Below, piece after piece: positions 27,549 through 45,798 of a DNA stretch of 64,000 nt (position 1 is the stretch's first letter; each line of letters begins with the position of its first letter). The translations under genes and the position numbers were made by a program. This DNA comes from Rebecca billardiae RCC1528. Its lineage: Eukaryota; Protista; Haptophyta. The stretch lies in the NCBI GenBank assembly GCA_965240325.2, contig OZ251227.1:2046001-2110000 (forward strand). Reading direction: 5' to 3'. The notes under the pieces were generated by a model, which made no database searches, was not told the origin of the DNA, and saw only the letters and a list, made by a program, of their open reading frames with translations.

Positions 27549-27747
27549 CAGGGCTTTGAAAGATAATTATTCCCAGACTCCAAACTTCTCGATGCGAAAT
27601 TGGCGGTCGCATCTCTGCCTCGCGAGGCCACATCTCGGCGTCGTCGGCGAGTCGGCGAGGAAAAACAACGGGACAGCCGACGACAGGCGTACCTTCACGA
27701 GTTGCCGACGACCCTAGCCTGCGGGCCATCTTCGATCCGTGATCACC

Positions 27748-29351
27748 ATGGCGGACGCGCCCGCGGCTGCGACCCCAAAGAAGAGCAAAACCCGCCCGCC
27801 GGGCGTCTACAAGATCGAAAAGAGGGTGGAGGCCTACAAGGACCGCGTGAAGGCGCACAAGGTCGGACCCGGGACAAAGGGGACGCCGCTGCCCGCGAAG
27901 AAGCCGCCGACGATCATCGCGCTGTACAACTTCAAGGGTGGCGTTGGCAAGACGACCAACCTCATCAACATCGCAACGACGATGGCCGCGACAAAGCGGG
28001 TGCTGATCGTCGACGCCGATCCGCAGTGCAACGTCACCACCTTCTTCATCCCTTCTGTGGATGACGCGGCCGAGAAGGGTGCTCAGCCTGCAGGCGGCCC
28101 GGCTGATGGTCACGGCGATGGGGACGGCGGGGCCCCTGCGCCAGTGGCATCATCTTCGAGCGGCATCCGCGCGGCTGAGGACCCGCTGCCCGCGGGTGCT
28201 GTGGGCAAGCCGCACTCCATGGCGCAGATCGACAATGCCGTGCTCTACACGGAGTACGGCGTCGACGACCTCGACGTGCTGCTAGCTCCCGCGTTCGAGG
28301 GCGAGATCGCCGCGCTCGTGCCGCCAGACAAGTACCTCACTCCGGAGCCCATCGAGCTGGACGACGGCTCGGCATCGTGGCCTGCCCACAACCTGCTGCT
28401 CATCCCAGGCAGCCCGACCGTCGCGCTGCTCGAGCGCAGCATCGGCAAGGCCGAAGGCATGGACGCGCCCGTCAAACTGGGCGCGTTCCGCAAGCTGCTG
28501 CTGGCGTCCGCGGAGGTCACGGGCGCCGAGGTGGTGCTCGTCGACCTGGGCCCGTCTGCCTCGCCACTGAACATCGTGCGCGCTGCGCGCCCGCGCACGG
28601 CGCCCCATCCGGCGGGATCCGGCCAGCGCGTACGTCCGCCATCCTTGCGCACACTTCACCGCACAACCGTCTCACACTCGTGTGCCCACCGTGCGTGTGC
28701 GTCACATTGTGCTGTGGTTTCTGGCTGTGGCCATGATGACCGCCCTCCGACTGCGCGCAGTGCTTCCTCCTCTCGTGCGACTACATCTTGCCGCCGGTGT
28801 TCGCTGACTCGTACTCGACGTTCAGCATGCACAAGCTGCTGGTGTTCCTCGTGCCCGAGCTCAAGGCTGAGCACTCGAAGATCATCCGCGCGCAGGGCGA
28901 TGCTGGGCCGAACGGCAAGCTGCAGGGCGAGATCACCGCGCGGCAGCAGGAGCTCGGGTACGCGTTCAACCGGAAGATGCCGCGGCTGCTGCCGTTCATC
29001 TTCACCAACTACATAGCCGCGCAGAACAACGTGCTGCGGATCCAGCCCGCACGCTTCGTGGTGCTGGCGCAGAACATCTTGGAGCGGCAGGACGTGCTCA
29101 ACGCGAGCTCGGACCTCTTCCTCCCGCACAACGGCAGCATGACCCTGTGCCTCTGCAAGAACCTCGGCCAAGTGCAGGGCGCGTCGCTGTCAGCGGGCGT
29201 GGCTGCTGCTCACCTCACCGAGCAGCACTTGAGGGAGGAGCGCATCATGAATCCGGCCAAGAAGATCGCGCTGATGCAGATTACCTACGCTCGCAAGCGC
29301 TACGCAGCGTTCGTGGAGTGGCTGCTCGACGTGTGCGTCAGCGGCAAGTGA
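27748..29351 (+). CDS. ParA/Soj/MinD-family P-loop ATPase, copy 1 (472 aa). Exons 27748-28575 and 28761-29351
   Basis: Deviant Walker A YNFKGGVGKTT, VLIVDADPQCN, LLLIPGS, Walker B VVLVDLGPS. Intron 28576-28760 gives SPLNI|CFLLSCDYILPPVFAD. Lys-rich N-terminus PKKSKTR. Confidence 0.9.
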
Positions 29352-29667
29352 AGTCGTTGTCGAGAGTCTTCGATCACCGAATGCGCACGCATGCAGCAGT
29401 AGTCGTGCACTTCGTGCAGCGTGCAGCGCGCAGTGGTGCGTATACGATTTTCATCATCTACGTACTCCATATCGTCATTGTCATGTGATCCGGCTGATCC
29501 GCCTCGCCGTCAGCAGCAGACGAGACATGCAGAAACTCATCAGCAGATCGGATGATTGTCAGATCGATTCGACAGATCGCGCGCATCGATCGTACTTCGC
29601 GGCAATCAGCATATGCGGCTCAGACTGGGCAGCGCAGGGCAGCCTGCTGCGGCACCGGGGCACGTAG

Positions 29668-31806
29668 TCACAATAAGGCCTTCGGCGGCGGCGCTGCCGA
29701 ATCGATGCCGGCGCCAATCTCATCCCGGACCTGCCGCAGCTTGCGGTGCTCTGGGAGCAGGTGGTGCTCCGCCTCGAGCGCGCGCGCCGCCTCCCGCGCC
29801 ACGCGCGCGCCCTCCGGATCGCCGCACGCCATCAGCGCGAGGCCGAGGTTGGCGCGCGCAAACGCCGCGCGCCGATCGCGGCCGGCGCGCTCGAGCCCGT
29901 CCGCCGCGCGCGTGTGGAGCTCGGCGGCGGCGCGCGCGTCGCCCTGCGCGCAGAGGACGGAGCCGAGCGTATCGAGCGTGTCGACGGTGTCGGGCGCCTC
30001 GGCGCCGAGGCTCGCCTCCCGCCCGGCGAGCACGGCGCGCGCCAGGCCCTCCGCCTCCGCCAGCGCGCGCCCCGACTGCGCGAGCACGGCGCAGAGCGCG
30101 CCCATCGTCGCGTAGCACCGCGTGTCCTCGGCGCCCGCGCCGCCCTCGGCGCCGTACGCGCCCGCCCCCTCCTCCCCCGGCGGCGGCGCCGCGCCCGCGC
30201 CCGCCGGCGCCGCCTCGCGCGGCCCCTCGGCGCGCGCACGCAGCGTGTCTCTTAGGATGGCCTCCGCCTCGGCGAGGGCGCGCGGCTCGGCCGAGCCGGC
30301 GAGCGCGCGCGCGACCAGCTCGCGGCCCGCCAGCGTGAGCTTGTGCGCGGGCCCGTGCACGCGCTCGAGCGCGCTCAGGTTGCGCCGCGCGAGCGCCTTC
30401 GCCTCCGCGCACGCGCCGCGCGTGAGCAGGATGCGCGCGAGCGCGCCCCTCGACTCGAGGGTGGACGGGTGATTCGCGCCGAGGCCGGCCGCCGCCTCCT
30501 TCTGCGCGACCGTGCGCCGCGCGAGCTGCTCCGCCTCGAGCAGCGAGCCGCGCTCGGCGTGGAGCACCGTGAGGTTGTGCAGCGTGCGCAGCGTCTCCGG
30601 CGCCTCCGCGCCCAGCTGGCGCACGCGCCCGTCGAGCACGCGGCGGTACAGCGCCTCGGTCTCACCGAGCGGCGCGCCCTCCGCGCGAAGGATCGCCAGG
30701 TTCTCGACCGAGGTGAGCGTGCTCGGGTGCTCCGCGCCGAGCCGCGCCTCCTTGCCCGCGACGGCGCGCGAGTAGAGCGCCTCCGCCTCGGCGCGGTGCG
30801 CCGGGCCGCGCGCCTTGAGCAGCACCGCGAGGTTGTTCGCCGTGGCCAGCGTGTCTGGGTGCCCAGGCCCCAGCTCCGGACTCGCCTCGCGTGCCGCCAG
30901 CTCAGCGCGGTACAGCCGCTCCGCCTCCGCCACGTGGCCCAGCCGGCGCAGCAGGACGGCGAGCTTGTGCCGCAGCTTGAGCGGGCGCGCGGGCGAGCCG
31001 CTCGCCTCGAGCTCGCGCAGCGCACGCCGGCCGCACCCGCCGAGCCACTCGCGCAGCGCCGCGCCCACCGCCACGTTGAGCGCGTGGAAGCCCACCCCCG
31101 CCTGCACGGCCTCGCAGATGCTGCGCCGGTCCGTCGCGGAGGACGCGGCCGAGCGCTCGACGTCGACGCGCGAGAGCGCGGCGGCGATCGAGTCGAAGTC
31201 GTCGACGAGCGCGGTCTCGAACGCCCGGCGCGCCGAGCGCGGCATCGCGACCGAGAGCGCCGCGCCGCTCTCGACGGTGGCGTTGATCTCGAAGAGGCAC
31301 CACGCGCGCGTGAGCGCGAGCGGCGCGTGCCACGGCTCGAGGACGAGCACCGTCGTGCCGATGGCGTGCACGTTGGTCTGGAAGACGGCCGACCACCACT
31401 CGAACGGGCGCGTCGCGGTGTCCCACTGCGAGTTGGTCACGAGGTCGAGCCACCAGAACGCCTCGGCGGCGTGGCTGACGAAGCGCGTCGCGCGGCCGAG
31501 GTCGCCGGCGGAGCCAACGACGGTCGGCGTGCCATCCGCAGCCGGCGCATCCGCTGCCTGCCCGCCGTTCCCGCGCGCGAGCAGCTCGACGTACGAGCAG
31601 CGCGCGACGCGCGTGAGCGGCCGGATGAGCTCAAAGCACACGTCCTCGGTGCTGAGCGGCTCGCCGGCGCCGCGGGCCGAAGGGGGCTACTCCCACGCGC
31701 GGTGGGTGCGCGGCGGGCCTGGCTCGGGCGCACGCGCGCGGGCCATCTCCCGCAGCGCGCGCAGCACGCCGAGGCGAACGCCGCGTCTCTCGAAATCGGC
31801 CGCCAT
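29668..31806 (-). pseudogene. TIR/HET-like + kinesin-light-chain-type TPR gene, disrupted copy
   Basis: Relative to 42765-44972 it has a CAG>TAG stop at 31687-31689 and a 72-bp in-frame deletion at about 31470 that removes WGLAFGSLVEAL... Confidence 0.85.
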
Positions 31807-31969
31807 GCTGACGACGTCTCCAGTACAGGTCGCTGCGTCGTTTTTCGGACTGCTTCGTTTTTCGGACCCGGGCGATGGCGACAGTGGCTCGCTCATCGGC
31901 GGGTGCGTGGCGGGCGCGCCGCGGCAGGGCTGAGCAGCCTGTCGGCGCGTGGGGTGACGTGCCCGTCAC

Positions 31970-32640
31970 TATACGTTACCAGTCGGGTCGCGGTGCCTGC
32001 TGGCATCGTCCTCGGCCGCTCGCAGCTCAGGCGCTGCGCTGATCGGTACGCCCGCGCTTACGCTGTGCGCGCCGGCCGGGCCCAGCGCAAGCGCCTCGAT
32101 GAAGGCGGCTAAGGGCGTCAAGCCGTACTCGGTTGAGGCGCGAAAGCGGAGACCTACAAGATATAGCGCGCGGTAGTTGCCCAGAAGGCGGCTGCCATGC
32201 GGTGGTGTTGGGGCGCGCGGCTGCGTGCTCGGCCGACGACAACGAGCCCTCTGGCACGCTCTCATCATCGAAGTTGAGTGTGTTCACAGCCACGCCGGCG
32301 GGGATGCGCTGGAAGACTGCTCCAGCCTTCCGCGCCAACGTTGAGCTTGCCAAGCAGTAGTCGGCACGCCAGGCCGCCAAGCTCGCGCGCCTTCGTGAGC
32401 AGCACGAGGCCGAACTTGATGACGTGCGCTAGGCTGAGGCGGTGAGGTTCGACGCGGCTGAGCTCGCCGACCAGCTCGGTATCCTTCCTGTGCACGCCGT
32501 AGAGGTCGCCGCGCCGAAGCCGGACAACATGCGGCTCAATGATGGCCAGAATGACTCGTGATCGTTGCGGGAATTCAACCAGAAGAAGGCCGCGCGAACT
32601 GCGCAGAAGGAGGCGGAGGCGGCGCGTGCGCGCGCTGGCC
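31970..32640 (+). pseudogene. Decayed coding relic, possibly a transposase C-terminal region
   Basis: Coding-like helical text (FRANVELAKQ*SARQAAKLARLREQHEAELDDVR*AEAVRFD...REFNQKKAARTAQKEAEAARAR) broken by TAG/TGA stops. Family not identified. Confidence 0.4.
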
Positions 32641-33310
32641 GGCGGTCCGAAAGTTCACCAGGTCGACGTCGACGGCGAACGCCGGACGGTGCCCGCGGCG
32701 CAGGGTCTGGAGCTGACATCGACAGTCGCCTGGTGAGCATGCTTACCTGCCCCTGGGGTTGGATGCTACACGCACGTGATGTCTGGAATGTATGATGCCG
32801 TCAGCCCGACTCAAATGGCCTACCAGGCCGCAGCTGCTAGCAGACTCCGCGTGCATGCTGAGAGCATGCGGTCCGAAAGTGGTCGACGGTGCCCGCGGCG
32901 GAGCAGCCGCAGCTGCCGTCTGGGCGGCTAGCGCGGAAGCTGAGTGAGCATGTTCGTCCGTTCCTGAGGTGGTCTACTGCATGTATGTTATATCTAGAAT
33001 GCATGATGCCGTTAGCCCGACTCACACGGCTCACCAGGCAGCGGCTCTGACTCGGCGCGCGCGCTGAGAGCCCGCGGGTCCGAAAGTTGAAGCATGCCGT
33101 CGGCGGCCCCGTCGTGGAGCTCGTGGCGTCCGTGGGGCACATGGTAGTGGAACAAAGTCGTCTAAATGGTACATAGCCGCTGGGTTGTACCTCAGGCACA
33201 CCCTGGGGGTGCCGCCAGACGCGATCTCGAGCGCCGCAGACCCCCGGGGGCGCCGCCGCCATCGTGCACAAAAAGTGAACAGCAATCGGGTCCGAAAGTT
33301 GAAGCAGCGA
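32640..33310. repeat. Degenerate tandem repeat of about 210-225 bp, 3-4 units
   Basis: GGTCCGAAAGT at about 32644, 32870, 33077 and 33289. ATGATGCCGTYAGCCCGACTCA at about 32792 and 33003. Confidence 0.75.
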
Positions 33311-33499
33311 CCTGTAGTCATTACTCATTACCCCCACCTCTTGAAAGGCCGATAGGCGGCGGAAAATTTCACAGCAGGATGGCGGTCGCGCCAAACCTCG
33401 GCCCTCGTCGCCGTGGCAGCAACCGCGTCTTCGCGAGTTGGCGACCCTCGCCGCAGCGCGACACAGACAAGCCCGTGATGCCATCCGCAGAGGCATGAA

Positions 33500-34100
33500 A
33501 CGTCGAGCATGCAACATCGCCGCGCCATCCTCGTCCATCGCAGGCGCTGCGGGACGAGGCGGAAGTCGTCACGCCGGTGACGGATGCGCTGCGATTCGTG
33601 TGCCCGCGTGAGCAGCGCTTGCCCACTCTCGATCGCGAGTGGCACACGCTGTCGCTGTGCGCGCGCGCGCGCACAACCAACAGCTCCTCGTGCCGCCGAG
33701 CACGTGAGCGCCAGACCTGTCGAAGATGCGAAGAGCGACGACCGCGTGAACGTCAACGCGCTCGTGCTCAGCGTGGCGGCCGTGTACGACGTCAACGCGA
33801 CCTGCGCCGAGCCCATCATGCCTGGAGCGGACATCGGCAAGCATCCTCGCGACGACCGCTCTCGGCTGGCGTCAGGAGGACATGCACATGATCTACTCTG
33901 GCGGCTTCGTCGGCGGCGAGGCGCTCGATTACGCCATCGCGGTCGAGATGCAGCACATACAGCGCGTACCCGCGCTCGCGCGGAGCAACGGGCTACCCGC
34001 CCCGCCCCGCGTGCTGCACATTCCCTCGTGGGTGTGGGCCTCGCTGATGCGCACAGAGTACAGACGTGTACACGAGTGGGAGAACTTCACTCTTCAGGTG
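33500..34100 (+). pseudogene. Frameshifted coding relic ending in a Ulp1/C48-protease-like N-terminal fragment
   Basis: GFVGGEALDYAIAV...RVLHIPSWVWASLMRTEYRRVHEW loosely follows the Ulp1 pattern WLNDEVINFY...HFFNTFFY.KL...Y..V.RW. Truncated by repeat A. Confidence 0.3.
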
Positions 34101-34175
34101 TCACTGGTCCTCGCCCTCGGACTGTCCGTCACCCACGGCCACGAGAATGTGGAAAGACGCGAACCCGCAGAGGAA

Positions 34176-35550
34176 AAACAGCGGGGGCCTAGCGGCCTTT
34201 TCCCGGTGGGGCTGGTCGAACACAGCGCGTCTAGGACGCGACGGAGAAGCTTGCCAGGGCCGGCAGACCCGACGACGATGGGACATCCGGGCTGCCGCGT
34301 CTTCGCGCGTCGCGCGTGCGATTTAGCCATTAGCCAGGCGCGCAGCAGCGCGGCACTCTTCTGCAAGGCCCACCGAGGCGCCAGCGAGGCGCGCGTCGAT
34401 GCAGTCGTCGCTGCGCACGGCCGCTCGGGCACGGCGGCACGGCAACGGCACGCACCGATCACGCCGTGCGTGCGCGCGTCGGCCATCGACGCGTGGTAGT
34501 CGTGCAGCAACTGCAGCTCCGTGGGGTTTTCCGCACGTCGTGCGCGCTGCTGCCGCCGGACGCCCAGATGGCGCGCGACCGCGTCGGTCGCGGCGGCCTC
34601 GCGCGCCGCGCGCGGGGCGGCTCGACGCGCGGCGTGACCCGCGCGGCGCTCCGCGTTGCGCGCCTCGTCCACGCCGTTCAGCGTGCTCGCCAGCCGCGCG
34701 CGCAGCTGCGCGAGGCACGCGTCGAGCGCTGCCGGCGTCTCGCAGTTTGGGTGCGAGGCCGCGGGCGCGCGCGCGCCGGGGCGCGTGGCCTCGTGCGGGT
34801 GCACGGCGAGGCGCGCCAGGTCCACAAACGGCTCGTCGCGCAGTTCCAGCGCGCGCAGCCCGGCGACGCGCGCGTCCCAGCGCGCGACGTGTTTGGACAG
34901 CGCGTCCGACATGCGCGCGCCGCCCGCGTCGCCCTCGCCGCGGTACCGGCGGATGAGAATGGCCAGGGCTGCACGCACGTTGGCGAATTGCGCGCACGCC
35001 GCCGCGCTCCGCCTCCGCATCTGCACGACACACGCCGCGTAGACCACGAACGAATCCAGCTCGTGCACGACATCGTCAGCCGACGTGGCCATGTCGGGCC
35101 GACGGCGGCCAAAGTCACGACTCACGATGTGCCCCTCCCGACCGGGGACCCGGCGTCGTCCGGCAAAAGCGGCAGGCGCGGCGCTTCCGTACCGTTACCG
35201 TATTGTATAGGCGGTATGAACTGGGTAAGGGGGTATATACCGCTAAGATCGCCGCCGCCAGATTTGTGGGAATCGCAACGACATCTCTATGCTGCGGCGC
35301 GCGCAAAAATTAACCACATGCGTTCTCGATTCCCGAGGCGTGCCTTAATTGGCGCAAAAATTAACCAAGTGCGTTCTCGATTCCCGAGGCGTGCCTAATC
35401 AAAAAACGTTTCAGGCCTCGTTGTTCGTATTCCTACTCCGGTATTACTTTGCTCAGCAGTATTGGGCACCCAATTAAAGGGGGTCGGAGCTGGGTCTCCC
35501 AGGGCTTTGTCACGAATTAAAATTGTTTAAAGCGCTGTGTTCACCAGAAT
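34176..35550 (-). repeat. Dispersed repeat A, longer copy, containing ORF 34094..35125 of unknown function
   Basis: Reverse-complement match to 8373-9379 plus an extra 365 bp (about 34824-35188). Confidence 0.9.
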
Positions 35551-35659
35551 ATTGCGACAGCACTGGCACGGCCCGCCGACCCCCCCGCCCGCCAGGGCAC
35601 AGTTTTATTATTATCATCATCATCATATATTATAAGTAGCAGACATGCAAATATTCACT

Positions 35660-35800
35660 TGGCCCGCGGTGCAGGGCGGAGCGCGCAGCGTGGAGCCCGC
35701 AGTGCGGGCCCTAGCCCTAGGGCTAGGGCGGCTAGGCCCCGTTTCAAAAAGAGCATTGATCAAGTAAGAAAAAAGGGACGGGGGACGAATTTCAGGGCTG
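35660..35800 (-). repeat. Dispersed repeat B with a 22-bp perfect palindrome at 35708-35729
   Basis: GCCCTAGCCCTAGGGCTAGGGC; flanks match 9521-9679 inverted. Confidence 0.7.
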
Positions 35801-36099
35801 GAGGAGACCGAGTTTCGAATTTTGAGACCCATCTAGAGGTATCCATTCAGCGAGAAATGGTCGCGTCCGGCTTGTTTGTATTCAAGAGGAATCATCAACG
35901 TAACCCACGCCCAAGTGTCCAAGTCCATAAGAGTGGGTAAATTTTGTGGGTAGACTCTCGTAGTTCATGTGTGACCATATGTAGTTAGTAAAGTCTATAA
36001 TAGTAAAATAAATATGGCCTCGCCGCAGCAAGAACGACTCTCACCAACTCCAATAGTGCGAGACATTGAAAGATACCCGCAGCTATCTATTCGTCAGTG

Positions 36100-36194
36100 C
36101 CAGCCCATTTCATAGTCACTGAGCTCAAAAACCAGTACCGGCGTCGCCCGTCCCGGGTCGGTAGGTTTTGAGCCCTGAGAGTGAGACGGGCTGG
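36100..36194. mobile_element. Hairpin mini-element (MITE-like), about 95 bp, copy 1
   Basis: Imperfect palindrome CAGCCCATTTCAT...GCTCAAAAACC / GGTTTTGAGC...GTGAGACGGGCTG. Second copy at about 51529-51627. Confidence 0.65.
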
Positions 36195-36867
36195 GGCTTT
36201 CCGCTTTGAGCTTGGCCTCGCGCCAGGCGCCGCTCGCCGGAGCGGCGGCCGCTGCGCATGAGGCGTTCACTATCCGACGGACTCAGCGCAGGTGCGCGCG
36301 GCTGCGGCGGGTCCCGACGGTCATCGGCGTCGCTTTCGTGCCCCGCTCATCCCGCGCGCCCCGCCCTGCCGATGCCCCTTCGGGCTCGGCCCAGTGCGGG
36401 TTCCTCGTCGGACGCGGCTCCGCGTGCAGCGTGCTTGACTCGCGTGTGTGATTGATATTCTGGGTGCGAAAGCGCGTGGCGCGTGGGAGCGAGGCGCGTT
36501 TCTCGCTGCTGTGTTTCATCCAGCCGACCATGCGCGCGCCCGCGCGCGCCACGCCACGCGCCACGCCGCACGCCGCGCAGTTGAACAAGTCGAGGACGAG
36601 TAGTTTCAGCTTCACTCTGCACTCTGCCGAGCCTCGGATCTGGTGGAGCCCGTTCGCCTGATCCAGTCGGCGTGGTGCGAGCGGGTAGTCTTGGCCGTTC
36701 TGTCGGGATGTGGAGCAGCCACCACGGCCATCTCGCTCGCCCATAAGCCCTCGGCTCGCGCCGTCCATGGCCGAGCTGTGACGATGGGAGCCTGCCTCTA
36801 GCTGCGCTTGAAGGCGCGGCAAGCAGCGCGCGAGATCTGCGCGGGCGACGAGGCTGGGCAAATCCTC

Positions 36868-38823
36868 GCAGCACGAGCTGGACCGCGCGCACATCTATTT
36901 TGCTCTCGCCCGCCGGTCTCGAGTCTCCACTGCTTGACTGGCGCATCGAGCCGCGCGCTGACCGTGCCCGAGTCCGAGAGTCGGAGCGGCTCTGGCGCTC
37001 ACGAGGGCGGATGCCTGACTGCCTGACTAACGAGAGCCACCGAGGCTGATGGCTGCGAGCCGCGGCGAGTCCGCCGGTAACGATGGCGAGGTGGCATATA
37101 TATATATGCTACGGGCGACGCCGTGCTGGCCCCTCTCACCCGTGCTCGCAGTCGCCCTCCGGCCGCTCCGTAGTCGGTCACACCGCCGCGGCGGCACCGG
37201 CGACGCGCGCCGACGGCGGCCCTTGCAGTTGTACTCGTACGCACTCGGCATCGACGCGGCGGCGAGGCTGCAGCGTGCTGAGTGTCTGAGTGACGGAGCG
37301 GTCGGGCAGTCGGTGGCACAGCTCGGCACCGCGGGCCCCCAATAACCAACTACGTTGGTTCAGTGGGTCTTATTCATGTTATGACGCAGAATTCACGGAT
37401 TATACTAGTAAGCAGTGACTGTGAGCACCGCGCAGAACGCGGTCATATTGAGTCGTAGCAGTCAGCACACGTATGTAGCCATATAGCGCGCGGCGACTAG
37501 CAGCATATATGTCCGACCGTTGGAGTGTAATAAGCCTGGATGCCTAGCGCATGTGAATGTCCGTGCTGCCGCAGCTGTAACAGGACACTAACAGGTGCGA
37601 CTCGGGTAAGCGTGAGCGGCCAAGAGCAACGATGATCGTGAATGCGTGGCCGACGGAAGGACAGCGCGCCTCCCGCGAGGCGCGAGCCCCGGGGTGGTGT
37701 GCACTGAAACGGAGACGAAAGGACTATGGGGGTACAGAGAAAAGTAAGCGCTGCGCCTCACTTGGGCTCGGGCATGCATGGGAGCTTGATGATCATCGCG
37801 GTGATATCATCCCGGTAGTCGCCCTCCTCCTTTCGCCATGCGGCCGACGCGCGCTCGATCAGCCTGCGATCAGCCGGGTCGGTCGGACGTCCGCGCGTCG
37901 CGCAGGGCGTCAGCAGCGCGGCAAGGGGCAGGCTCGCAGGCCAGGCAATGGCCACGTGCGCGAGCGCGCGCGCGCGAGCGCGCGCACGGCGATGGGCGCG
38001 GTCTGCGCGCGCACTTGGTGCACGCATTCGTGGCGCCCGATCTTGCGAGCAAGGGGGCGACGAGCGTCGCCGCCGCGTCTGATTGGAGGAACTCCCACAC
38101 GCCATCCGACGCGAGCACGATGAAGGCGTCCTGCTCCGAGAGCTTGCGCACGCTCACGTCCGGCTCAGCCGTCACGCCGATGCGCTTGACGCCGTGGTCG
38201 CCGATGGATCGCGACATGGCGAGGCCCGGCGCGGTGTGCTGCGAGTCGAGGTAGACGCGCGCGGGGCCGCCCCAGTCCTCGGGCGGCGAGACGAACCCGC
38301 CATGCTTTTTGATCCGCGCGAGCTCCTCGGGCAGGTCGGGCTTGTGGTCGCGGCTCAGATCGTGGGCCACGACCTGGCCCTTGCGCTTGCCGTGCGAGGC
38401 GAGCACGGCGCGCGAGTCGCCGCAGCACGCGGTGTACAGCACGTCCTCGATGAGCAGGATGACGGTGGCGGTCGTGCCCGACGCCTCGGCGTCGATGCTC
38501 CCGCGCTCCAAGCCGAGCAGCTCGTCCACGCGCACGAACGACTCCTGCAGCGCGCGCTCGGGCTCGTCGAAGAGCGCCGGGTGGTCCTCGAGCAGCGCCT
38601 GCAGCGTGTGCGCGACAAACTGCGAGCACTCGGCGCCGCTCAGCCCTGCGGGCGGGCGCGCGGGGCGGCGCGCATGAGCGAGCGCGCGCGCGCCGCGCCG
38701 CGCCGCGCCGCGCCGCGTCGCCCCGCACGCACCGTGCCCGTCGAAGACTGCAAACATGGCCGCGGCCGGGTTGCCGGCAAACGGGTAGGACACGAGGCCG
38801 CGGTCCTGGTTGATCTTGCCCGC
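36868..38823 (-). pseudogene. Inverted duplicate of 49516-51522 containing a 5'-truncated PP2C gene (coding part 38823-37758, two introns retained) and its downstream region
   Basis: Reverse-complement identity. The copy starts abruptly at AGKINQDRG and lacks exon 1 and the start of exon 2. Confidence 0.9.
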
Positions 38824-38899
38824 ACCCAGCCGAGGCGCGGCGCGCGGACGCGGAGCGCGAGCGGCTGGACGGCTTCGCCACGCTCGACTCGCTCGATTG

Positions 38900-40253
38900 C
38901 TTGCGCGAGAGCGCGCCCGACGCTGCCGCCGCCGCCGCCGCCGCTGACGACGACGACCCCGCCGCTGCCGCCGCCGCCGCCGCCGCCGCCGCCGCGCCCT
39001 TCCCGCACTTCGTCCATCGAGATGGCGTGCCGCCGTTCCGCCCGACCTACGAGTGGGCGGACGTGCCGGAGGGCGCAAACAAAGGTGCCGGCGGACGCCG
39101 ACGTCGACTGGCGCGGCCAGCGCGCGCGCATCCCCACGCACATGCCGCTGCACCTGCCGGCGTCGTGCTTCATCACGCAGCCCGACCCCGACGGCCTCGG
39201 CGACTGCTCGTGCTGCACGCCTCGCGCGTGCTGGGCCGGCGGCCCGGCGTCGGCCGAGGGCGGCGGGACTTGTGACGCGTGCGTGCGCTGCCTCGCCAGG
39301 GCGCCGCCGCCGCCGCTCGGCCCGGACGCGGTTACGCGCGACTACGGCCTGCTCGACGTGCGCGCCGAGACGACGATCGGCGAATCGAGGCGGACATCGG
39401 CGAGTGGCTCGCCGAGCGCGCTGCGCCGGGGCGGCCGCCCAAGCCCAGTCTCGTGCGCGTGCTCCGCTCGGACGACGGCCGCACGCTGCTCGAGCCGCTC
39501 GACGCGGCGGCCACGGCGCGCGACGTCGACCTGTACAACATCGCGGAGGAGGTCGTCGTCGTCGCGCTCGCCGACGGCAGCCCGATCTACGCCGCTCGCC
39601 ACCGCGCCGCGCACGGCGCCAACTCGCGCACGGGCAAGATGCCCGACCACATTGCCACCATCAACAACCTCGCCGCCGCCGACCATGACAGCCACGCCGA
39701 GCAGACCCACCTGCCGCGCCTCGACAAGCACACGTGGCGGCGGCTCGCCAAGGTCACCGCCCGCTACGCGCAGCAGCCCACGCTCATGTGCTTCTGCTGC
39801 GGCTACGCCATGTACCCGGGCGAGGGCCGCATCGTCCACGTGGTCGGCGTGAGCGACGTCACCGAGCTGCGCGCCGTTCGGGTGTTTCGCCCCATCCTCA
39901 ACCACCTGGCGGCGCGCACACGGCGTGAGCTCGACGAGATCGTGACGTTCGAGCGCGTGGACAAGGAGGAGTACATCCGCCGCCCGCCGCCGCCACTCGC
40001 GCGGGAGTCGGACGCCGCGGCCGCCGCCGACGCGCACGGCGACGCCGACTTCGTCCTCGAGGACGGCTCCGACGACGAGGACGCGCCGGGCGAGGACTCT
40101 GACGACCAGTTCGAGGACGAGGACGACGAGTTCGCCGACGTGGGCTGGTCCAACCAGCCGCACGAGGCCGAGCCGCAGCACCGCGTGGCGTCGTGCTCGG
40201 CGTGCGCGGCGCGCACGCAGCGCCTGTACGCCCCGTTGTCGTTGCCGCCCTAG
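38900..40253 (+). pseudogene. Frameshifted Cys-rich coding relic, possibly a Helitron RepHel N-terminal fragment
   Basis: Coding-like text moves across three frames (shifts near 39085 and 39385). CFCCGYAMYP followed later by VASCSAC. Ends at TAG 40251-40253. Confidence 0.4.
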
Positions 40254-40691
40254 CGGTAGGGTGAGTGAAGCCCAAGTCGCGCCAAGTGAGCAACCGTGAT
40301 CCCGATTTCGGTGCAAGGGTGGTGATGAACAGTTGGTCCGATGCGTCCTTCATAGATGAACAGGCGGTTGCGAAGCTGTACATGTACAGTTGATGACTTA
40401 AAGAATATCACTTTCGTAACTGATGTATGATAGGCTTCGTTAATTGTCATCGATGGGTTGTATATATATATATATAATACCCGTCTTGTAGGGGGCTGGG
40501 GCAGGACGGGTGGATTCCCAGACTCCAAACTTCTCGATGCGAAATTGGCTGTCGGTCGCATCTCTGCCTCGCGAGGCGACGACATCTCGGCGAGTCGGCG
40601 AGGACAAAACAACGGGACAGCCGACGACAGGCGTACCTTCACGAGTTGCCGACGACCCTAGCCTGCGGGCCATCTTCGATCCGTGATCACC

Positions 40692-42298
40692 ATGGCGGAC
40701 GCGCCCGCGGCTGCGACCCCAAAGAAGAGGAAAACCCGCCCGCCGGGCGTCTACAAGATCGAAAAGAGGGTGGAGGCCTACAAGGACCGCGTGAAGGCGC
40801 ACAAGGTCGGACCCGGGACAAAGGGGACGCCGCTGCCCGCGAAGAAGCCGCCGACGATCATCGCGCTGTACAACTTCAAGGGTGGCGTTGGCAAGACGAC
40901 CAACCTCATCAACATCGCAACGACGATGGCCGCGACAAAGCGGGTGCTGATCGTCGACGCCGATCCGCAGTGCAACGTCACCACCTTCTTCATCCCTTCT
41001 GTGGATGACGCGGCCGAGAAGGGTGCTCAGCCTGCAGGCGGCCCGGCTGATGGTCACGGCGATGGGGACGGCGGGGCCCCTGCGCCAGTGGCATCATCTT
41101 CGAGCGGCATCCGCGCGGCTGAGGACCCGCTGCCCGCGGGTGCTGTGGGCAAGCCGCACTCCATGGCGCAGATCGACAATGCCGTGCTCTACACGGAGTA
41201 CGGCGTCGACGACCTCGACGTGCTGCTAGCTCCCGCGTTCGAGGGCGAGATCGCCGCGCTCGTGCCGCCAGACAAGTACCTCACTCCGGAGCCCATCGAG
41301 CTGGACGACGGCTCGGCATCGTGGCCTGCCCACAACCTGCTGCTCATCCCAGGCAGCCCGACCGTCGCGCTGCTCGAGCGCAGCATCGGCAAGGCCGAAG
41401 GCATGGACGCGCCCGTCAAACTGGGCGCGTTCCGCAAGCTGCTGCTGGCGTCCGCGGAGGTCACGGGCGCCGAGGTGGTGCTCGTCGACCTGGGCCCGTC
41501 TGCCTCGCCACTGAACATCGTGCGCGCTGCGCGCCCGCGCACGGCGCCCCATCCGGCGGGATCCGGCCAGCGCGTACGTCCGCCATCCTTGCGCACACTT
41601 CACCGCACAACCGTCTCACACTCGTGTGCCCACCGTGCGTGTGCGTCACATTGTGCTGTGGTTTCTGGCTGTGGCCATGATGACCGCCCTCCGACTGCGC
41701 GCAGTGCTTCCTCCTCTCGTGCGACTACATCTTGCCGCCGGTGTTCGCTGACTCGTACTCGACGTTCAGCATGCACAAGCTGCTGGTGTTCCTCGTGCCC
41801 GAGCTCAAGGCTGAGCACTCGAAGATCATCCGCGCGCAGGGCGATGCTGGGCCGAACGGCAAGCTGCAGGGCGAGATCACCGCGCGGCAGCAGGAGCTCG
41901 GGTACGCGTTCAACCGGAAGATGCCGCGGCTGCTGCCGTTCATCTTCACCAACTACATAGCCGCGCAGAACAACGTGCTGCGGATCCAGCCCGCACGCTT
42001 CGTGGTGCTGGCGCAGAACATCTTGGAGCGGCAGGACGTGCTCGAGGAGAGCTCGGACCTGTTCGTCCCGCACAACGGCAGCATGACCCTGTGCCTCTGC
42101 AAGAACCTCGGCCAAGTGCAGGGCGCGTCGCTGTCAGCGGGCGTGGCTGTTGCTCACCTCACCGAGCAGCACTTGAAGGACGAGGGCATCAACAAAAATC
42201 CGGCCAAGCAGATCGCGCTGACGCAGATTACCTACGCTCGCAAGCGCTACGCAGCGTTCGTGGAGTGGCTGCTCCACGTGTGCGTCAGCGGCAAGTGA
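40692..42298 (+). CDS. ParA/Soj/MinD-family P-loop ATPase, copy 2 (473 aa). Exons 40692-41519 and 41705-42298
   Basis: Same motifs and intron as copy 1. N-terminus PKKRKTR is NLS-like. Confidence 0.9.
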
Positions 42299-42764
42299 AG
42301 TCGTTGCGAGTCTTCATCACCGAATGCGCACGCAGGCAGGCAGTGATCGAGCAGCGTGCAGCGCGCAGTGGTTGCCTGGTTGGTACGATTTTCATCTACT
42401 CCATCTCGTCATTGTCATGTGATCCGGCTGATCCGCCTCGCCGTCAGCAGCAGACGAGACATGCAGAAACTCATCAGCAGCAGATCGGATGATTGTCAGA
42501 TGATCATCATCGACAGATCGATCGCATCACGCATATCGATCATCGATCGTACGCGCGTTACTGTGTGTCTTTGTGCAGTGTTGGATGGCGTCAATCACGC
42601 CTTAACCAAGTGTGCACGTTAAAACATAGTAAACTGCTGTAAAGTGTCGTAATATTATTCGCGGCAATAATCATCGGCACGACTGTGAGCATAATTGCAT
42701 AATAGTAAATAGGCTCCGGTCCTGGGCAGCGCAGGGCAGCCTGCTGCGGCACCGGGGCACGTAG

Positions 42765-44972
42765 TCACAAGGCCTTCGGCGGCGGCGCTGCCGAATCGAT
42801 GCCGGCGCCAATCTCATCCCGGACCTGCCGCAGCTTGCGGTGCTCTGGGAGCAGGTGGTGCTCCGCCTCGAGCGCGCGCGCCGCCTCCCGCGCCACGCGC
42901 GCGCCCTCCGGATCGCCGCACGCCATCAGCGCGAGGCCGAGGTTGGCGCGCGCAAACGCCGCGCGCCGATCGCGGCCGGCGCGCTCGAGCCCGTCCGCCG
43001 CGCGCGCGTGGAGCTCGGCGGCGGCGCGCGCGTCGCCCTGCGCGCAGAGGACGGAGCCGAGCGTATCGAGCGTGTCGACGGTGTCGGGCGCCTCGGCGCC
43101 GAGGCTCGCCTCCCGCCCGGCGAGCACCGCGCGCGCCAGGCCCTCCGCCTCCGCCAGCGCGCGCCCCGACTGCGCGAGCACGGCGCAGAGCGCGCCCATC
43201 GTCGCGTAGCGCCGCGTGTCCTCGGCGCCCGCGCCGCCGTCGGCGCCGTGCGCGCCCGCCCCCTCCTCCCCCGGCGGCGGCGCCGCGCCCGCGCCCGCCG
43301 GCGCCGCCTCACGCGGCCCCTCGGCGCGCGCACGCAGCGTGTCTCTCAAGATGGCCTCCGCCTCGGCGAGGGCGCGCGGCTCGGCCGAGCCGGCGAGCGC
43401 GCGCGCGACCAGCTCGCGGCCCGCCAGCGTGAGCTTGTGCGCGGGCCCGTGCACGCGCTCGAGCGCGCTCAGGTTGCGCCGCGCGAGCGCCTCCGCCTCC
43501 GCGCACGCGCCGCGCGTGAGCAGGATGCGCGCGAGCGCGCCCCTCGACTCAAGGGTGGACGGGTGATTCGCGCCGAGGCCGGCCGCCGCCTCCTTCTGGG
43601 CGACCGTGCGCCGCGCGAGCTGCTCCGCCTCGAGCAGCGAGCCGCGCTCAGCGTGGAGCACCGTGAGGTTGTGCAGCGTGCGCAGCGTCTCCGGCGCCTC
43701 CGCGCCCAGCTGGCGCACGCGCCCGTCGAGCACGCGGCGGTACAGCGCCTCGGTCTCACCGAGCGGCGCGCCCTCCGCGCGAAGGATCGCCAGGTTCTCG
43801 ACCGAGGTGAGCGTGCTCGGGTGCTCCGCGCCGAGCCGCGCCTCCTTGCCCGCGACGGCGCGCGAGTAGAGCGCCTCCGCCTCGGCGCGGTGCGCCGGGC
43901 CGCGCGCCTTGAGCAGCACCGCGAGGTTGTTCGCCGTGGCCAGCGTGTCCGGGTGCCCAGGCCCCAGCTCAGGACTCGCCTCGCGCGCCGCCAGCTCGGC
44001 GCGGTACAGCCGCTCCGCCTCCGCCGCGTGGCCCAGCCGGCGCAGCAGGACGGCAAGCTTGTGCCGCAGCTTGAGCGGGCGCGCGGGCGAGCCGCTCGCC
44101 TCGAGCTCGCGCAGCGCACGCCGGCCGCACCCGCCGAGCCACTCGCGCAGCGCCGCGCCCACCGCCACGTTGAGCTCGTGGAAGCCCACCCCCGCCTGCA
44201 CGGCCTCGCAGATGCTGCGCCGGTCCGTCGCGGAGGACGCGGCCGAGCGCTCGACGTCGACGCGCGAGAGCGCGGCGGCGATCGAGTCGAAGTCGTCGAC
44301 GAGCGCGGTCTCGAACGCCCGGCGCGCCGAGCGCGGCATCGCGACCGAGAGCGCCGCGCCGCTCTCGACGGTGGCGTTGATCTCGAAGAGGCACCACGCG
44401 CGCGTGAGCGCGAGCGGCGCGTGCCACGGCTCGAGGACGAGCACCGTCGTGCCGATGGCGTGCACGTTGGTCTGGAAGACGGCCGACCACCACTCGAACG
44501 GGCGCGTCGCGGTGTCCCACTGCGAGTTGGTCACGAGGTCGAGCCACCAGAACGCCTCGGCGGCGTCGGCCGAGCCTGCGGCCTCGGCGGCCGCCTCCAA
44601 CGCCTCGACGAGCGAGCCAAACGCCAGCCCCCACGCGTGGCTGACGAAGCGCGTCGCGCGGCCGAGGTCGCCGGCGGAGCCAACGACGGTCGGCGTGCCA
44701 TCCGCAGCCGGCGCATCCGCTGCCTGCCCGCCGTGCCCGCGCGCGAGCAGCTCGACGTACGAGCAGCGCGCGACGCGCGTGAGCGGCCGGATGAGCTCAA
44801 AGCACACGTCTTCGGTGCTGAGCGGCTCGCCGGCGCCGCGGGCCGAAGGGGGCTGCTCCCACGCGCGGTGGGTGCGCGGCGGGCCTGGCTCGGGCGCGCG
44901 CGCGCGGGCCATCTCCCGCAGCGCGCGCAGCACGCCGAGGCGAACGCCGCGTCTCTCGAAATCGGCCGCCAT
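42765..44972 (-). CDS. TIR/HET-like N-terminal domain + kinesin-light-chain-type TPR repeats (735 aa, intact, intronless)
   Basis: FVSHAWG, FWWLD, VLVLEPW, LTRAWCLFEI. TPRs of the LGP.HPDTL.TANNLAVLL..G...EAE.LY.RA type. Confidence 0.85.
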   Translation of the reverse strand: MAADFERRGVRLGVLRALREMARARAPEPGPPRTHRAWEQPPSARGAGEPLSTEDVCFELIRPLTRVARCSYVELLARGHGGQAADAPAADGTPTVVGSAGDLGRATRFVSHAWGLAFGSLVEALEAAAEAAGSADAAEAFWWLDLVTNSQWDTATRPFEWWSAVFQTNVHAIGTTVLVLEPWHAPLALTRAWCLFEINATVESGAALSVAMPRSARRAFETALVDDFDSIAAALSRVDVERSAASSATDRRSICEAVQAGVGFHELNVAVGAALREWLGGCGRRALRELEASGSPARPLKLRHKLAVLLRRLGHAAEAERLYRAELAAREASPELGPGHPDTLATANNLAVLLKARGPAHRAEAEALYSRAVAGKEARLGAEHPSTLTSVENLAILRAEGAPLGETEALYRRVLDGRVRQLGAEAPETLRTLHNLTVLHAERGSLLEAEQLARRTVAQKEAAAGLGANHPSTLESRGALARILLTRGACAEAEALARRNLSALERVHGPAHKLTLAGRELVARALAGSAEPRALAEAEAILRDTLRARAEGPREAAPAGAGAAPPPGEEGAGAHGADGGAGAEDTRRYATMGALCAVLAQSGRALAEAEGLARAVLAGREASLGAEAPDTVDTLDTLGSVLCAQGDARAAAELHARAADGLERAGRDRRAAFARANLGLALMACGDPEGARVAREAARALEAEHHLLPEHRKLRQVRDEIGAGIDSAAPPPKAL

Positions 44973-44988
44973 GCTGACGACGTCTCAT

Positions 44989-45013
44989 TACCCCCATATT
45001 CAATATGGGGGTA
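44989..45013. other. Perfect 12-bp-stem hairpin at the duplication breakpoint
   Basis: TACCCCCATATT-C-AATATGGGGGTA. Confidence 0.9.
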
Positions 45014-45046
45014 CTATCACGCCTTAACCAAGTGTGCACGTTAAAG

Positions 45047-45798
45047 GCCAACCGGTCCAGACCTCAGGATTATCCTTAACCTGCACGCCAGTGGGCGGCC
45101 CACTGGCGTGCAGGTTAAGGGTTTCGTCAGGTTGGCGCGCGTGTGGGGCGACGCTCCCGCCGCCACCTCGCTCTCGCCTTCCGCCGCCAGGGCGAGGCCG
45201 CGCGAAGTCCAGTAGATCTTCCGATGGGACGCAGCGGGGCGGTAGCGAAGCGGTGAACTACTGTCGCTTGCGCGTGGCGCAGCGCTTCGCGCCCTCGCAC
45301 CTCGACGGTCAGCTGCAGGCCCGCGCGAGCGCGAGCCGGTGTGCCGCCGCCACATTCAGCCAGAGACATGCCGCGCCTTGCCTGCCGAGGCAGCGAAGAG
45401 GCACGCACGTGAAGCCGCTGGGCGCCATGGCGCGCGCCCATGACCGTACTGTCACATGGCTCACGCCGTCCTGGGATGCGCGCCTCGGGTTGCGCTCAGC
45501 GCGCGCATACTTTGCGGGGACGACAGCACGGCTGAAGCCGAGAGGCGGCGCACACGCCCGTGCGGGCTCAAGGCGCCGAGAAGATGGTCAGACGCGAGTT
45601 GCCCGGCGCAGGGCGGCGCAGAAAGGCCCTATGCCTCTGCCCGACCGCGTGCGCCATCGCCGCGTGCACGTCTACGACCGCGGCGGCGCGGCAGCGGGCG
45701 GCGCCTCGCGGCGGATGGCTGTGGCGGGCGCACGCGGCGGGTTTTGAATTTTTCTCATTTTCCGAGTTTCCCAAATCCTGAGGTCTGGACCGGTTGGC
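45047..45798. mobile_element. 752-bp non-autonomous TIR element (25-bp perfect TIRs) with an internal 47-bp perfect palindrome at 45074-45120
   Basis: GCCAACCGGTCCAGACCTCAGGATT at 45047-45071 and its reverse complement at 45774-45798. It interrupts the motif CACGTTAAAACATAGTAAACTG that is intact at about 42615-42636. Confidence 0.85.

What the first reader, a model, noticed from the sequence alone, without database searches (positions are those of the whole stretch)
27569..44986. Candidate system: duplicated two-gene cassette of a ParA/Soj ATPase plus a TIR/HET-like-TPR protein in a eukaryote
Seen: a 4.3-4.5 kb unit occurs twice (27569-31820 and 40514-44986). It holds exactly two convergent genes, an intron-containing ParA-family ATPase and an intronless protein with FVSHAW/WLD/RAWCLFEI motifs plus TPRs. 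The breakpoints hug the pair, 14 bp upstream of the TPR ATG and about 180 bp upstream of the ParA ATG. Established: TIR and fungal HET domains share a fold with a catalytic Glu in a WC..E/W..QE helix, and bacterial conflict proteins combine ParA/MinD-like ATPase, TIR and KLC-type TPR domains (e.g. actinobacterial FxSxx-COOH system TPR proteins). Inference: this may be a split eukaryotic sensor/regulator/effector or toxin-antidote module that moves as a unit.
Basis: partly seen in the sequence, partly recalled or inferred. Interest (0 to 1): 0.9.

Follow-up and report, generated by a model that had tools for sequence, protein, structure and literature searches.

The report
Duplicated ParA and TIR-like-TPR gene pair
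A 4.3-4.5 kb stretch holding a ParA-type ATPase gene and a TIR-like/TPR gene really is duplicated 13 kb apart in this GC-rich alga-like genome, but the two genes look like neighbours copied together, not a proven two-gene system, and one TIR-like copy is already broken.

Summary
The duplication is real. Window 27569-31820 and 40514-44986 are 96-99% identical with sharp ends, and each copy holds a spliced ParA/Soj-type ATPase gene convergent with an intronless gene.

Only copy B of that second gene is intact (735 aa). Copy A has a premature TAG at codon 40 and a 72-bp deletion that removes the HAW motif and the helix after it.

The N-terminal domain of the intact protein is TIR-like, on modest but consistent evidence:
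- a confident model whose best structural matches are TIR domains, at modest scores;
- an invariant Glu that aligns with the invariant Glu of this genome's own TIR_2 domains.

The domain belongs to a very large eukaryotic family with no Pfam model: about 10,000 cluster representatives and about 100 loci in this genome.

The ParA-like gene belongs to an old eukaryotic clade that includes haptophytes and a labyrinthulid.

The "module" reading is mostly unsupported. None of the 7 sources of ParA homologues examined elsewhere has a TIR-like neighbour, and the cassette occurs only twice.

One loose end remains. The genome's third ParA copy (contig C18) also lies beside a divergent TIR-like-LRR gene, which chance alone would give about 2% of the time.

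The read data found were too sparse to test the assembly.

The parts
27569..31820 (.). Duplication unit A (4252 bp)
   Evidence: blastn self-comparison; boundaries read
40514..44986 (.). Duplication unit B (4473 bp)
   Evidence: the genome-wide DNA search finds only these two copies of the cassette
40692..42298 (+). ParA-like ATPase gene, copy B. Exon 1 is 40692-41519, the intron 41520-41704 and exon 2 41705-42298, giving 473 aa. Walker A reads KGGVGKTT and the leader is NLS-like (PKKRKT).
   Evidence: Splice model; Pfam AAA_31 at 1.9e-14 and CbiA at 2.6e-12; family alignment A3 confirms the junction; both exons hit by profile A3
27748..29351 (+). ParA-like ATPase gene, copy A. Exon 1 is 27748-28575, the intron 28576-28760 and exon 2 28761-29351, giving an intact 472 aa.
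   Evidence: It differs from B at 1 site over about 1400 nt including the intron. About 17 differences then cluster in the last ~230 nt of the CDS.
42765..44972 (-). Intact TIR-like-TPR gene, copy B (735 aa, no intron)
   Evidence: ORF; GC3 0.95; TPR_12 at 8e-22 and TPR_10 at 9e-17
44088..44972 (-). N-terminal domain (residues 1-295). The TIR-like core is ~residues 100-290. Motifs are FVSHAW 109-114, WWLD 142-145, Q151 and RAWCLFE 191-197, with E197 invariant.
   Evidence: AF2 model with pLDDT 93.8; TIR domains top the Foldseek list and the VIA list (Z 5.6-6.4); hhalign pairs E197 with the invariant Glu of this genome's own TIR_2 domains; invariant or near-invariant columns
42765..44083 (-). 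Kinesin-light-chain-type TPR array (residues ~297-735)
   Evidence: Pfam TPR_12, TPR_10 and TPR_NPHP3; NF040586 matches the TPR part only, below cut-off
29668..31806 (-). TIR-like-TPR pseudogene, copy A. It has a TAG at codon 40 (31689-31687) and a 72-bp in-frame deletion between 31473 and 31472 that removes residues ~112-136.
   Evidence: 14 synonymous and 9 non-synonymous differences from B, including the nonsense change
42529..42721 (.). Intergenic insertion present only in copy B. It contains a 72-bp dispersed repeat (42565-42636) that has many 100% identical copies across the genome.
44987..45200 (.). MITE-like repeat abutting the right end of unit B. A short palindrome is followed by a ~153-bp dispersed repeat (45048-45200), which shares a segment with the 42565-42636 repeat.
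26356..27431 (.). 1076-bp foldback element (442-nt perfect inverted arms) 137 bp left of unit A. The genome holds at least 25 copies at 97-100% identity. It is not part of the duplication.
36868..38823 (.). One arm of a second, inverted segmental duplication; the other arm is 49516-51522 (95% identical). It overlaps the PP2C gene 37870-39153(-), whose C-terminal two-thirds recur at 49516-50471(+).

Best explanation
This is a recent, local segmental duplication (copies 12.9 kb apart) that copied two neighbouring genes which probably act independently.

Gene 1 is a ParA/Soj-type deviant-Walker-A ATPase. It belongs to an old eukaryotic clade. Here it looks like an N-terminally shortened paralogue of a longer gene on contig C18.

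Gene 2 is one of about 100 paralogues of a lineage-expanded family. The family joins a divergent TIR-like domain to kinesin-light-chain-type TPRs.

Inferred mechanism of gene 2, by analogy with SARM1, plant TIR receptors and ThsB: a single-chain sensor/effector. The TPR array would bind a ligand or hold the protein inactive. The TIR-like domain, through its invariant Glu197, would cleave NAD+ or a related nucleotide, or signal by oligomerising.

After the duplication, copy A of gene 2 was inactivated, while both ParA copies stayed intact.

Shown here: the duplication, the gene models, the lesions in copy A, the TIR-like fold at modest scores, the Glu alignment, the family sizes and the lack of conserved linkage. 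Inferred only: enzymatic activity, the sensor role of the TPRs and the functional independence of the two genes.
For: Duplication:
- Sharp ends, different flanks and copy-specific insertions.
- Only two cassette copies in 72 Mb.
- A second, inverted duplication lies next door, so the region is duplication-prone.

ParA-like gene:
- Pfam hits above cut-off.
- A 16-row clade with 99% SH-aLRT support that holds E. huxleyi, Prymnesium and Hondaea, separate from the ~330-aa bacterial ParA clade.
- The model of the E. huxleyi homologue matches DIP2308, ParA, Soj and McdA at Foldseek E 5e-11 to 1e-7.
- The C18 paralogue shares the start-codon region and everything from RPPGVYK onward, but has about 470-520 extra N-terminal residues.

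TIR-like domain:
- Model pLDDT 93.8.
- Foldseek's top 50 are mostly TIR domains.
- VIA Z 6.4 for SARM1, 6.0 for MyD88, 5.7 for RPP1 and SpbK, 5.6 for ThsB.
- The profile's best PDB hit is the PdTIR FISHAW region, E 0.14.
- TIR_2 is the only Pfam family hit repeatedly, by 7 of 65 members.
- hhalign P = 0.008 places FVSH, WLD, TVLVL and E197 on the corresponding elements of this genome's TIR_2 domains.

Family size: 9,944 representatives at E<=1e-3 and about 97-100 loci in this genome.

Independence of the two genes:
- No TIR-like hit near ParA homologues in E. huxleyi, C. incerta, Hondaea, Pavlovales, a TARA scaffold, the GCA_029979725 contigs or a giant-virus-like contig.
- No ParA near homologue P0001.
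- Copy A keeps ParA but has lost the TIR-like gene.
Against: - All three ParA-like genes of this genome sit beside a TIR-like-family gene. The C18 case is independent of the window's duplication and has a chance expectation of about 0.02.
- The TIR-like assignment rests on modest scores: Z below 8, Foldseek E about 0.1, and hhalign probability of only 4.8%.
- No expression data exist, and there was no read-level check of the assembly.
- Most contigs examined in other taxa are short or give only 10 kb on each side.
Confidence: 0.65

Rival explanations
1. The ParA-like ATPase and the adjacent TIR-like protein form a functional two-gene module in this lineage. ParA would act as regulator, positioning factor or antidote, and the TIR-like domain as effector. 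The cassette was duplicated as a unit.
For: - Three of three ParA-like genes abut a TIR-like-family gene. The C18 pair is an independent juxtaposition: a different subfamily, LRR instead of TPR, tandem instead of convergent, and no shared flanking DNA.
- The chance expectation for the C18 case is about 0.02, given about 100 loci in 72 Mb.
- The breakpoints enclose exactly the pair.
Against: - No linkage in any of the 7 other sources of ParA homologues examined, nor beside the closest outside TIR-like-TPR gene.
- About 97 TIR-like loci have no ParA partner.
- In copy A the TIR-like gene decayed while ParA stayed intact.
- The family is spread over many eukaryote groups, mostly as TIR-like plus TPR alone.
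- The second adjacency is a single post hoc observation in a genome where such genes cluster.
Confidence: 0.2
2. The two copies are alleles or haplotypes wrongly assembled in series, not a real duplication.
For: - The identity (96-99%) is in the range of allelic divergence.
- No read-level check was possible. The only run found holds a few low-depth short contigs.
Against: - The copies are separated by 8.7 kb of unrelated sequence that includes a PP2C gene.
- Homology stops sharply at both ends with unrelated flanks.
- Each copy has its own repeat insertions and lesions.
- The assembly has 41 contigs for 72 Mb.
Confidence: 0.05
3. The cassette is cargo of a transposable element (gene-capturing transposon) that mobilises the two genes together.
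For: Dispersed repeats lie right at or near the unit's ends: the foldback element 137 bp left of A, and the MITE-like repeat abutting B's right end.
Against: - Only two copies, on the same contig 13 kb apart.
- No terminal inverted or direct repeats of the unit: 9 of 60 end bases match.
- The flanking repeats differ between the copies and are independent insertions.
Confidence: 0.05

Closest known systems
TIR domains with NADase activity (SARM1, plant TNL TIRs such as RPP1/RPS4, bacterial ThsB, AbTir, SpbK)
   Same: - The same order of strands and helices over residues ~104-288.
- These are the best structural matches.
- There is an FxSHxW-type first strand, and an invariant Glu on the helix after the third strand, as in the plant SxWCLxEL motif. 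That Glu aligns with the invariant Glu of this genome's TIR_2 domains.
   Different: - No Pfam TIR, TIR_2 or PADLOC model reaches significance on the window protein.
- It has an extra ~100-residue N-terminal subdomain and extra C-terminal helices.
- It has a WxD..NQ motif.
- It is fused directly to TPRs, with no NB-ARC, NACHT or SAM domain.
- Activity is untested.
Fungal HET domain (PF06985)
   Same: - Similar motif pattern (xSYxWG-like, WxDxxxxNQ, RxWxxxE).
- Published remote homology of HET to TIR (PMC10197012).
- About 100 or more copies per genome, with lineage-specific expansion.
   Different: The HET model finds none of these loci, even at E<=1. The family is found in algae, oomycetes, ciliates, Paulinella and chytrids, and is mostly fused to TPR_10/TPR_12.
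ParA/Soj/McdA-type deviant Walker A ATPases; orphan ParA-like DIP2308 (PDB 3pg5)
   Same: KGGVGKTT Walker A, DADPQ and VDLGPS motifs. Pfam CbiA and AAA_31 hits. The fold of the family matches DIP2308, ParA, Soj and McdA.
   Different: - It is a eukaryotic nuclear gene with a spliceosomal intron and a basic leader.
- It is ~470 aa, with long inserts and a family-specific C-terminal half that has no Pfam hit.
- No ParB-like partner or centromere is evident.
- It forms a eukaryotic clade separate from the ~330-aa bacterial proteins.
Two-gene conflict modules (toxin-antitoxin, bacterial defence pairs; fungal two-gene immune clusters)
   Same: Tight adjacency of an NTPase and a putative NAD-consuming effector, duplicated together.
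   Different: Linkage is not conserved outside this genome. One partner is dispensable in copy A. There are only Walker-A-level matches to a PADLOC candidate, PDC-M28B.
FxSxx-COOH system TPR protein (NF040586)
   Same: KLC-type TPR repeats align (residues 297-546 against model positions 425-671).
   Different: The score is 107.8 against a cut-off of 300. The N-terminal half of the model is not matched.

Membership tests
TIR superfamily | Flavodoxin-like alpha/beta fold shared with solved TIR domains | tested here: met
   The AF2 model has pLDDT 93.8. TIR domains dominate both the Foldseek and VIA lists, e.g. SARM1 Z 6.4 with 122 residues aligned at 4.4 A. The scores are modest (Z below 8), and related folds (nucleoside deoxyribosyltransferase, DprA) score similarly.
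TIR superfamily | Conserved catalytic Glu on the helix after the third strand | tested here: met
   E197 is the only invariant column among 65 family members. hhalign aligns it with the invariant Glu of eight TIR_2 domains of the same genome (P 0.008).
TIR superfamily | Recognition by curated TIR sequence models (Pfam TIR_2, PADLOC ThsB) | tested here: not met
   The window protein gets no hit. TIR_2 gives weak hits in 7 of 65 members (best E 0.0056), and ThsB in 1 of 65 at 0.03.
TIR superfamily | NAD+ or nucleotide cleavage activity | not testable with these tools
   Needs an enzyme assay of residues ~1-295, wild type against a Glu197 mutant.
HET domain (PF06985) | Match to the Pfam HET model | tested here: not met
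   No member matches at E<=1. The genome-wide HET search gives two unrelated hits at E>0.17.
ParA/Soj-type ATPase | Deviant Walker A (KGGxGK[ST]) and the CbiA/AAA_31 domain | tested here: met
   KGGVGKTT is read. AAA_31 scores 54.4 bits (cut-off 27) and CbiA 47.2 bits (cut-off 25.4).
ParA/Soj-type ATPase | ParA fold over the whole protein | tested here: met
   Tested on the E. huxleyi homologue (35% identical), not on the window protein. Foldseek gives E 4.9e-11 to 3pg5, and 1e-9 to 1e-7 to ParA, Soj and McdA. Model pLDDT is only 60.5.
ParA/Soj-type ATPase | Cognate ParB-like partner or cargo adaptor nearby | not tested
   The unit holds only the two genes. No ParB search was run.
Two-gene functional module (sensor/effector or toxin-antidote) | Linkage of the two families conserved across loci and genomes | tested here: not met
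   Outside this genome, none of the 7 sources of ParA-like homologues examined has a TIR-like profile hit, and no ParA lies next to P0001. Within this genome there is one further independent adjacency, on C18, with chance about 0.02.
Two-gene functional module (sensor/effector or toxin-antidote) | Both partners kept intact in each copy | tested here: not met
   In copy A the ParA gene is intact but the TIR-like-TPR gene has a nonsense codon and a 72-bp deletion.
FxSxx-COOH system TPR protein (NF040586) | Score over the curated cut-off across the whole model | tested here: not met
   107.8 bits against a cut-off of 300, over the TPR part only.
Segmental duplication | Two high-identity copies with sharp ends and unrelated flanks, and no transposon termini | tested here: met

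The most novel reading that the evidence does not exclude
In this alga, ParA-like ATPases are dedicated partners of TIR-like immune-type proteins. All three ParA-like genes abut a TIR-like gene, at two independently formed loci. That would be a eukaryotic two-gene NTPase/TIR conflict module, within an unrecognised eukaryote-wide TIR/HET-like family of about 10,000 sequence clusters.
Probability: 0.15. Interest if true: 0.75.

Novelty: new member of a known kind. Interest (0 to 1): 0.4.

Why it matters
The cassette itself is an ordinary recent gene duplication. Two by-products are useful.

First, a very large family of TIR-like domains goes unrecognised by Pfam and by annotators. Members are named "kinesin light chain", "TPR repeat protein" or "hypothetical". 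The family has about 100 paralogues here and keeps an invariant Glu. It is a plausible, testable candidate for an innate-immunity or cell-death gene set in algae, oomycetes, ciliates, Paulinella and chytrids, comparable to fungal HET or plant TIR genes.

Second, the nuclear ParA-like clade is an unexplained eukaryotic use of a bacterial positioning ATPase. A distant relative sits on a giant-virus-like contig. Its repeated adjacency to TIR-like genes in this one genome is cheap to test.

Tried and rejected
- Complex prediction. The two ParA exon products plus the TIR-like domain (ESMFold2-based job) scored 0.00 in both runs, and the controls were not run. This is no verdict either way. The chains were folded without alignments, and ParA was split at the intron.
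- Reads. Only one public run held any of the stretch (share 0.09). It held short low-depth contigs identical to parts of the ParA gene, including an unspliced intron/exon piece, plus dispersed repeats. It says nothing about the arrangement or about expression.
- Curated sequence models. HET, PADLOC on the TIR-like family and NCBIfam FxSxx_TPR gave no membership. PADLOC on ParA gave only Walker-A-level hits to candidate PDC-M28B.
- ESM Atlas feature search gave no informative named cluster; the best score was 0.78.
- tRNA scan of 25000-47000 found nothing.
- Literature searches found no description of this TIR-like-TPR family or of ParA-like genes in giant viruses; the second search was noisy.
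It was replaced by the protein comparison.
- Transposon-cargo idea: no terminal repeats were found.
- The window's own spliced ParA protein could not be folded, because it has no single reference. A homologue was folded instead.

Full report
**Observation**

The window is G000:C10:2046001-2110000, from a 72-Mb, 41-contig assembly. The window is GC-rich, at 59-80% in 2-kb bins.

Self-comparison confirms a direct duplication. The blocks are 27569-29587 ~ 40514-42528 (96.4%), 29625-31475 ~ 42722-44570 (98.8%) and 31469-31820 ~ 44635-44986 (98.9%). The copies start 12,945 bp apart. Homology ends sharply on both sides, and the flanks are unrelated. A DNA search of the whole genome finds the cassette only at these two places. 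The ParA gene alone has a third copy on contig C18, 86% identical.

**Gene models**

*ParA-like gene, copy B.* The ATG is at 40692. Exon 1 runs to 41519, a 185-nt GTGCGC...CAG intron spans 41520-41704, and exon 2 runs 41705-42298. The product is 473 aa. The spliced junction reads LNI|CFLLSCDYILPP. This restores a block conserved in the family alignment (LNQxIVxSCDYILPP).

*ParA-like gene, copy A.* It has the same structure (27748-29351) and is intact at 472 aa.

*TPR gene, copy B.* It is an intronless 735-aa ORF at 42765-44972 on the minus strand. It carries FVSHAW (109-114), WWLD (142-145) and RAWCLFE (191-197), followed by TPR_12/TPR_10 repeats.

*TPR gene, copy A.* It is not equivalent to copy B. 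It has CAG>TAG at codon 40 (31689). It also has a 72-bp in-frame deletion that removes residues ~112-136, i.e. HAW of the first motif and the following helix. The remaining differences are 14 synonymous and 8 other non-synonymous changes. The copy therefore seems to have been under constraint for much of its history and was inactivated recently.

Copy B additionally has a 193-bp intergenic insertion holding a 72-bp dispersed repeat. A MITE-like repeat abuts its right end.

**The N-terminal domain of the TPR protein**

Pfam and NCBIfam see only the TPRs. A profile built from paralogues plus two outside homologues was searched against 1.84 billion representatives. It found 9,944 proteins at E<=1e-3 and 1,995 at E<=1e-30.

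Sampled members are unnamed, or are called "kinesin light chain" or "TPR repeat protein". They have no Pfam model over this domain and usually carry TPR_10/TPR_12 repeats. Recorded taxa are Oomycota, Haptophyta, Chlorophyta, Ciliophora, Paulinella and a chytrid.

In a 65-sequence alignment the only invariant residue is E197. Near-invariant residues are S111, W114, W143, Q151, P182, W183, P186, R191, W193 and C194.

AlphaFold2 run on that alignment gives a confident model: pLDDT 93.8 and pTM 0.91. The evidence that it is TIR-like is as follows:
- Foldseek against the PDB lists mostly TIR domains (RPPT, RPS4, RPP1, SNC1, RUN1, SARM1, ThsB, AbTir). The E-values are weak, about 0.1-0.7.
- The Foldseek-independent search gives SARM1 TIR Z 6.4, MyD88 6.0, Hydra TRR-2 5.8, RPP1 5.7, SpbK 5.7 and ThsB 5.6, over model residues ~104-288. 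The related nucleoside deoxyribosyltransferase and DprA folds score close behind.
- The family profile's best PDB sequence hit is the Paracoccus TIR protein, E 0.14, over the FISHAW...WYD stretch.
- TIR_2 is the only Pfam family hit repeatedly by members: 7 of 65, best E 0.0056.
- I aligned eight canonical TIR_2 domains found in this same genome and compared profiles. hhalign (P 0.008, but probability only 4.8%) places FVSH on FISH, WWLD on FLDV, TVLVL on VVLVF, and E197 on the invariant Glu of the TIR_2 set.

Each line is weak to moderate, but they agree. I therefore accept "TIR-like with the catalytic-type Glu in place".

The HET model does not match. The HET resemblance therefore stays at the level of motifs, plus the published HET-TIR link (PMC10197012).

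**The ParA-like gene**

Pfam AAA_31 and CbiA are well above cut-off. Full-length relatives of 410-600 aa occur in Emiliania huxleyi, Prymnesium, Pavlovales, Hondaea, Chlamydomonas incerta, Picocystis and Mesostigma. One occurs on a 219-kb contig whose genes look like a giant virus: topoisomerase II, a poxvirus-type poly(A) polymerase regulatory subunit and DNMK.

In a quick maximum-likelihood tree the window protein falls in a 16-row clade with 99% support, together with the E. huxleyi, Prymnesium and Hondaea proteins. The ~330-aa bacterial ParA proteins form a separate clade. This is an old eukaryotic family, not a recent transfer from bacteria.

A model of the E. huxleyi member (pLDDT only 60.5) matches the orphan ParA-like DIP2308, ParA, Soj and McdA.

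The C18 paralogue shares the start-codon region (MADAPAA) and everything from RPPGVYK onward, including the intron. It has about 470-520 additional N-terminal residues with no Pfam hit, and its Walker A reads KGSVGKT. The window copies are thus a shortened form carrying a PKKRKT linker.

**Is the pair a system?**

Evidence against:
- (a) The genome has about 97-100 TIR-like loci but only three ParA-like genes.
- (b) The profile finds no TIR-like domain within up to 10 kb of ParA-like homologues in E. huxleyi, C. incerta, Hondaea, Pavlovales, a TARA scaffold, contigs of GCA_029979725 or the giant-virus-like contig. No ParA lies on the 21-kb contig of the closest outside TIR-like-TPR homologue.
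- (c) The cassette has been copied only once, locally, with no transposon-like ends. A second, inverted duplication involving a PP2C gene lies next to it, so the region is simply duplication-prone.
- (d) In copy A the TIR-like gene has decayed while ParA is intact.

Evidence for:
- The third ParA-like gene (C18:872612-875598) begins 0.6 kb downstream of a gene (C18:868993-872001) that encodes a divergent TIR-like domain followed by LRR_6 repeats. The domain keeps WFVSH, a 56-aa insert, YWVC..RQH and TRAWVGFE.
- The two loci share no DNA outside the ParA gene. The neighbours belong to different subfamilies and lie in different orientations. The juxtaposition is therefore independent.
- With about 100 loci in 72 Mb, finding one within 5 kb of a given 3-kb gene has a chance of about 0.02.

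That is one post hoc observation, in a genome where such genes cluster. I count it as suggestive only, and give the module reading 0.2.

A complex prediction with the split ParA and the TIR-like domain gave no verdict.

**Assembly**

Only one public run holds traces of the stretch, as a few short low-depth contigs. The allele-versus-paralogue question could therefore not be tested with reads.

The internal evidence favours a true duplication: 8.7 kb of unrelated genic spacer, sharp ends, and copy-specific insertions and lesions.

**Verdict**

The domain assignments are right in kind: ParA-type, and TIR-like rather than HET or FxSxx.

The "system that moves as a unit" is not supported beyond one local duplication.

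The more interesting results are the size and anonymity of the TIR-like-TPR family, and the unexplained 3-of-3 adjacency.

Noticed in passing
window 26356-27431: A 1076-bp foldback element with 442-nt perfectly complementary arms. The genome holds at least 25 copies at 97-100% identity, and older copies at 83-93%. It looks like a recently active non-autonomous transposon.
   Followed up: partly
window 42044-42275 vs 29100-29328: ParA copies A and B differ at 1 site over about 1400 nt, including the intron. About 17 mostly amino-acid-changing differences then cluster in the last ~230 nt. Copy A agrees with the C18 copy at most of these sites, so the tail of copy B is the derived one. The cause may be gene conversion of the 5' part or fast evolution of the tail.
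   Followed up: partly
G000:C18:872475-875598 (L020): The third ParA-like copy has an open ~520-aa N-terminal extension with no Pfam hit and a KGSVGKT Walker A. A TIR-like(+insert)-LRR_6 gene (C18:868993-872001) lies immediately upstream.
   Followed up: partly
L034/L035 (metagenome contigs of 219 and 135 kb): A distant member of the ParA-like family (P0291) sits among genes typical of giant viruses: topoisomerase II, a poxvirus-type poly(A) polymerase regulatory subunit, DNMK and cathepsin-like peptidase C1. GC is 42%.
   Followed up: no
window 36868-38823 and 49516-51522: An inverted segmental duplication (95% identical) copied the C-terminal two-thirds of a PP2C phosphatase gene (37870-39153, minus strand) to 49516-50471.
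   Followed up: partly
window 51676-54702 (-): An intact TPR-CHAT (caspase-like) protein of about 1008 aa (CHAT E 1e-46) lies 6.7 kb from unit B. This is another conflict-type gene in the same neighbourhood.
   Followed up: no
window 42565-42636 and 45048-45200: Two short dispersed repeats (72 bp and ~153 bp, many near-identical copies genome-wide) share a common segment. One is inserted between the genes of copy B, and the other lies about 60 bp beyond the right end of copy B, within the MITE-like repeat that abuts it.
   Followed up: partly
G000: C13:293189, C5:1949398, C34:1015527, C13:1545244, C10:3069773, C10:2301163: The genome also has about seven loci with canonical Pfam TIR_2 domains, some in tandem within one ORF. 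These are separate from the TIR-like-TPR family.
   Followed up: partly
window 8370-9379 and 34176-35554: A further inverted repeat pair (86-91% identical) lies within the window. It was not examined.
   Followed up: no
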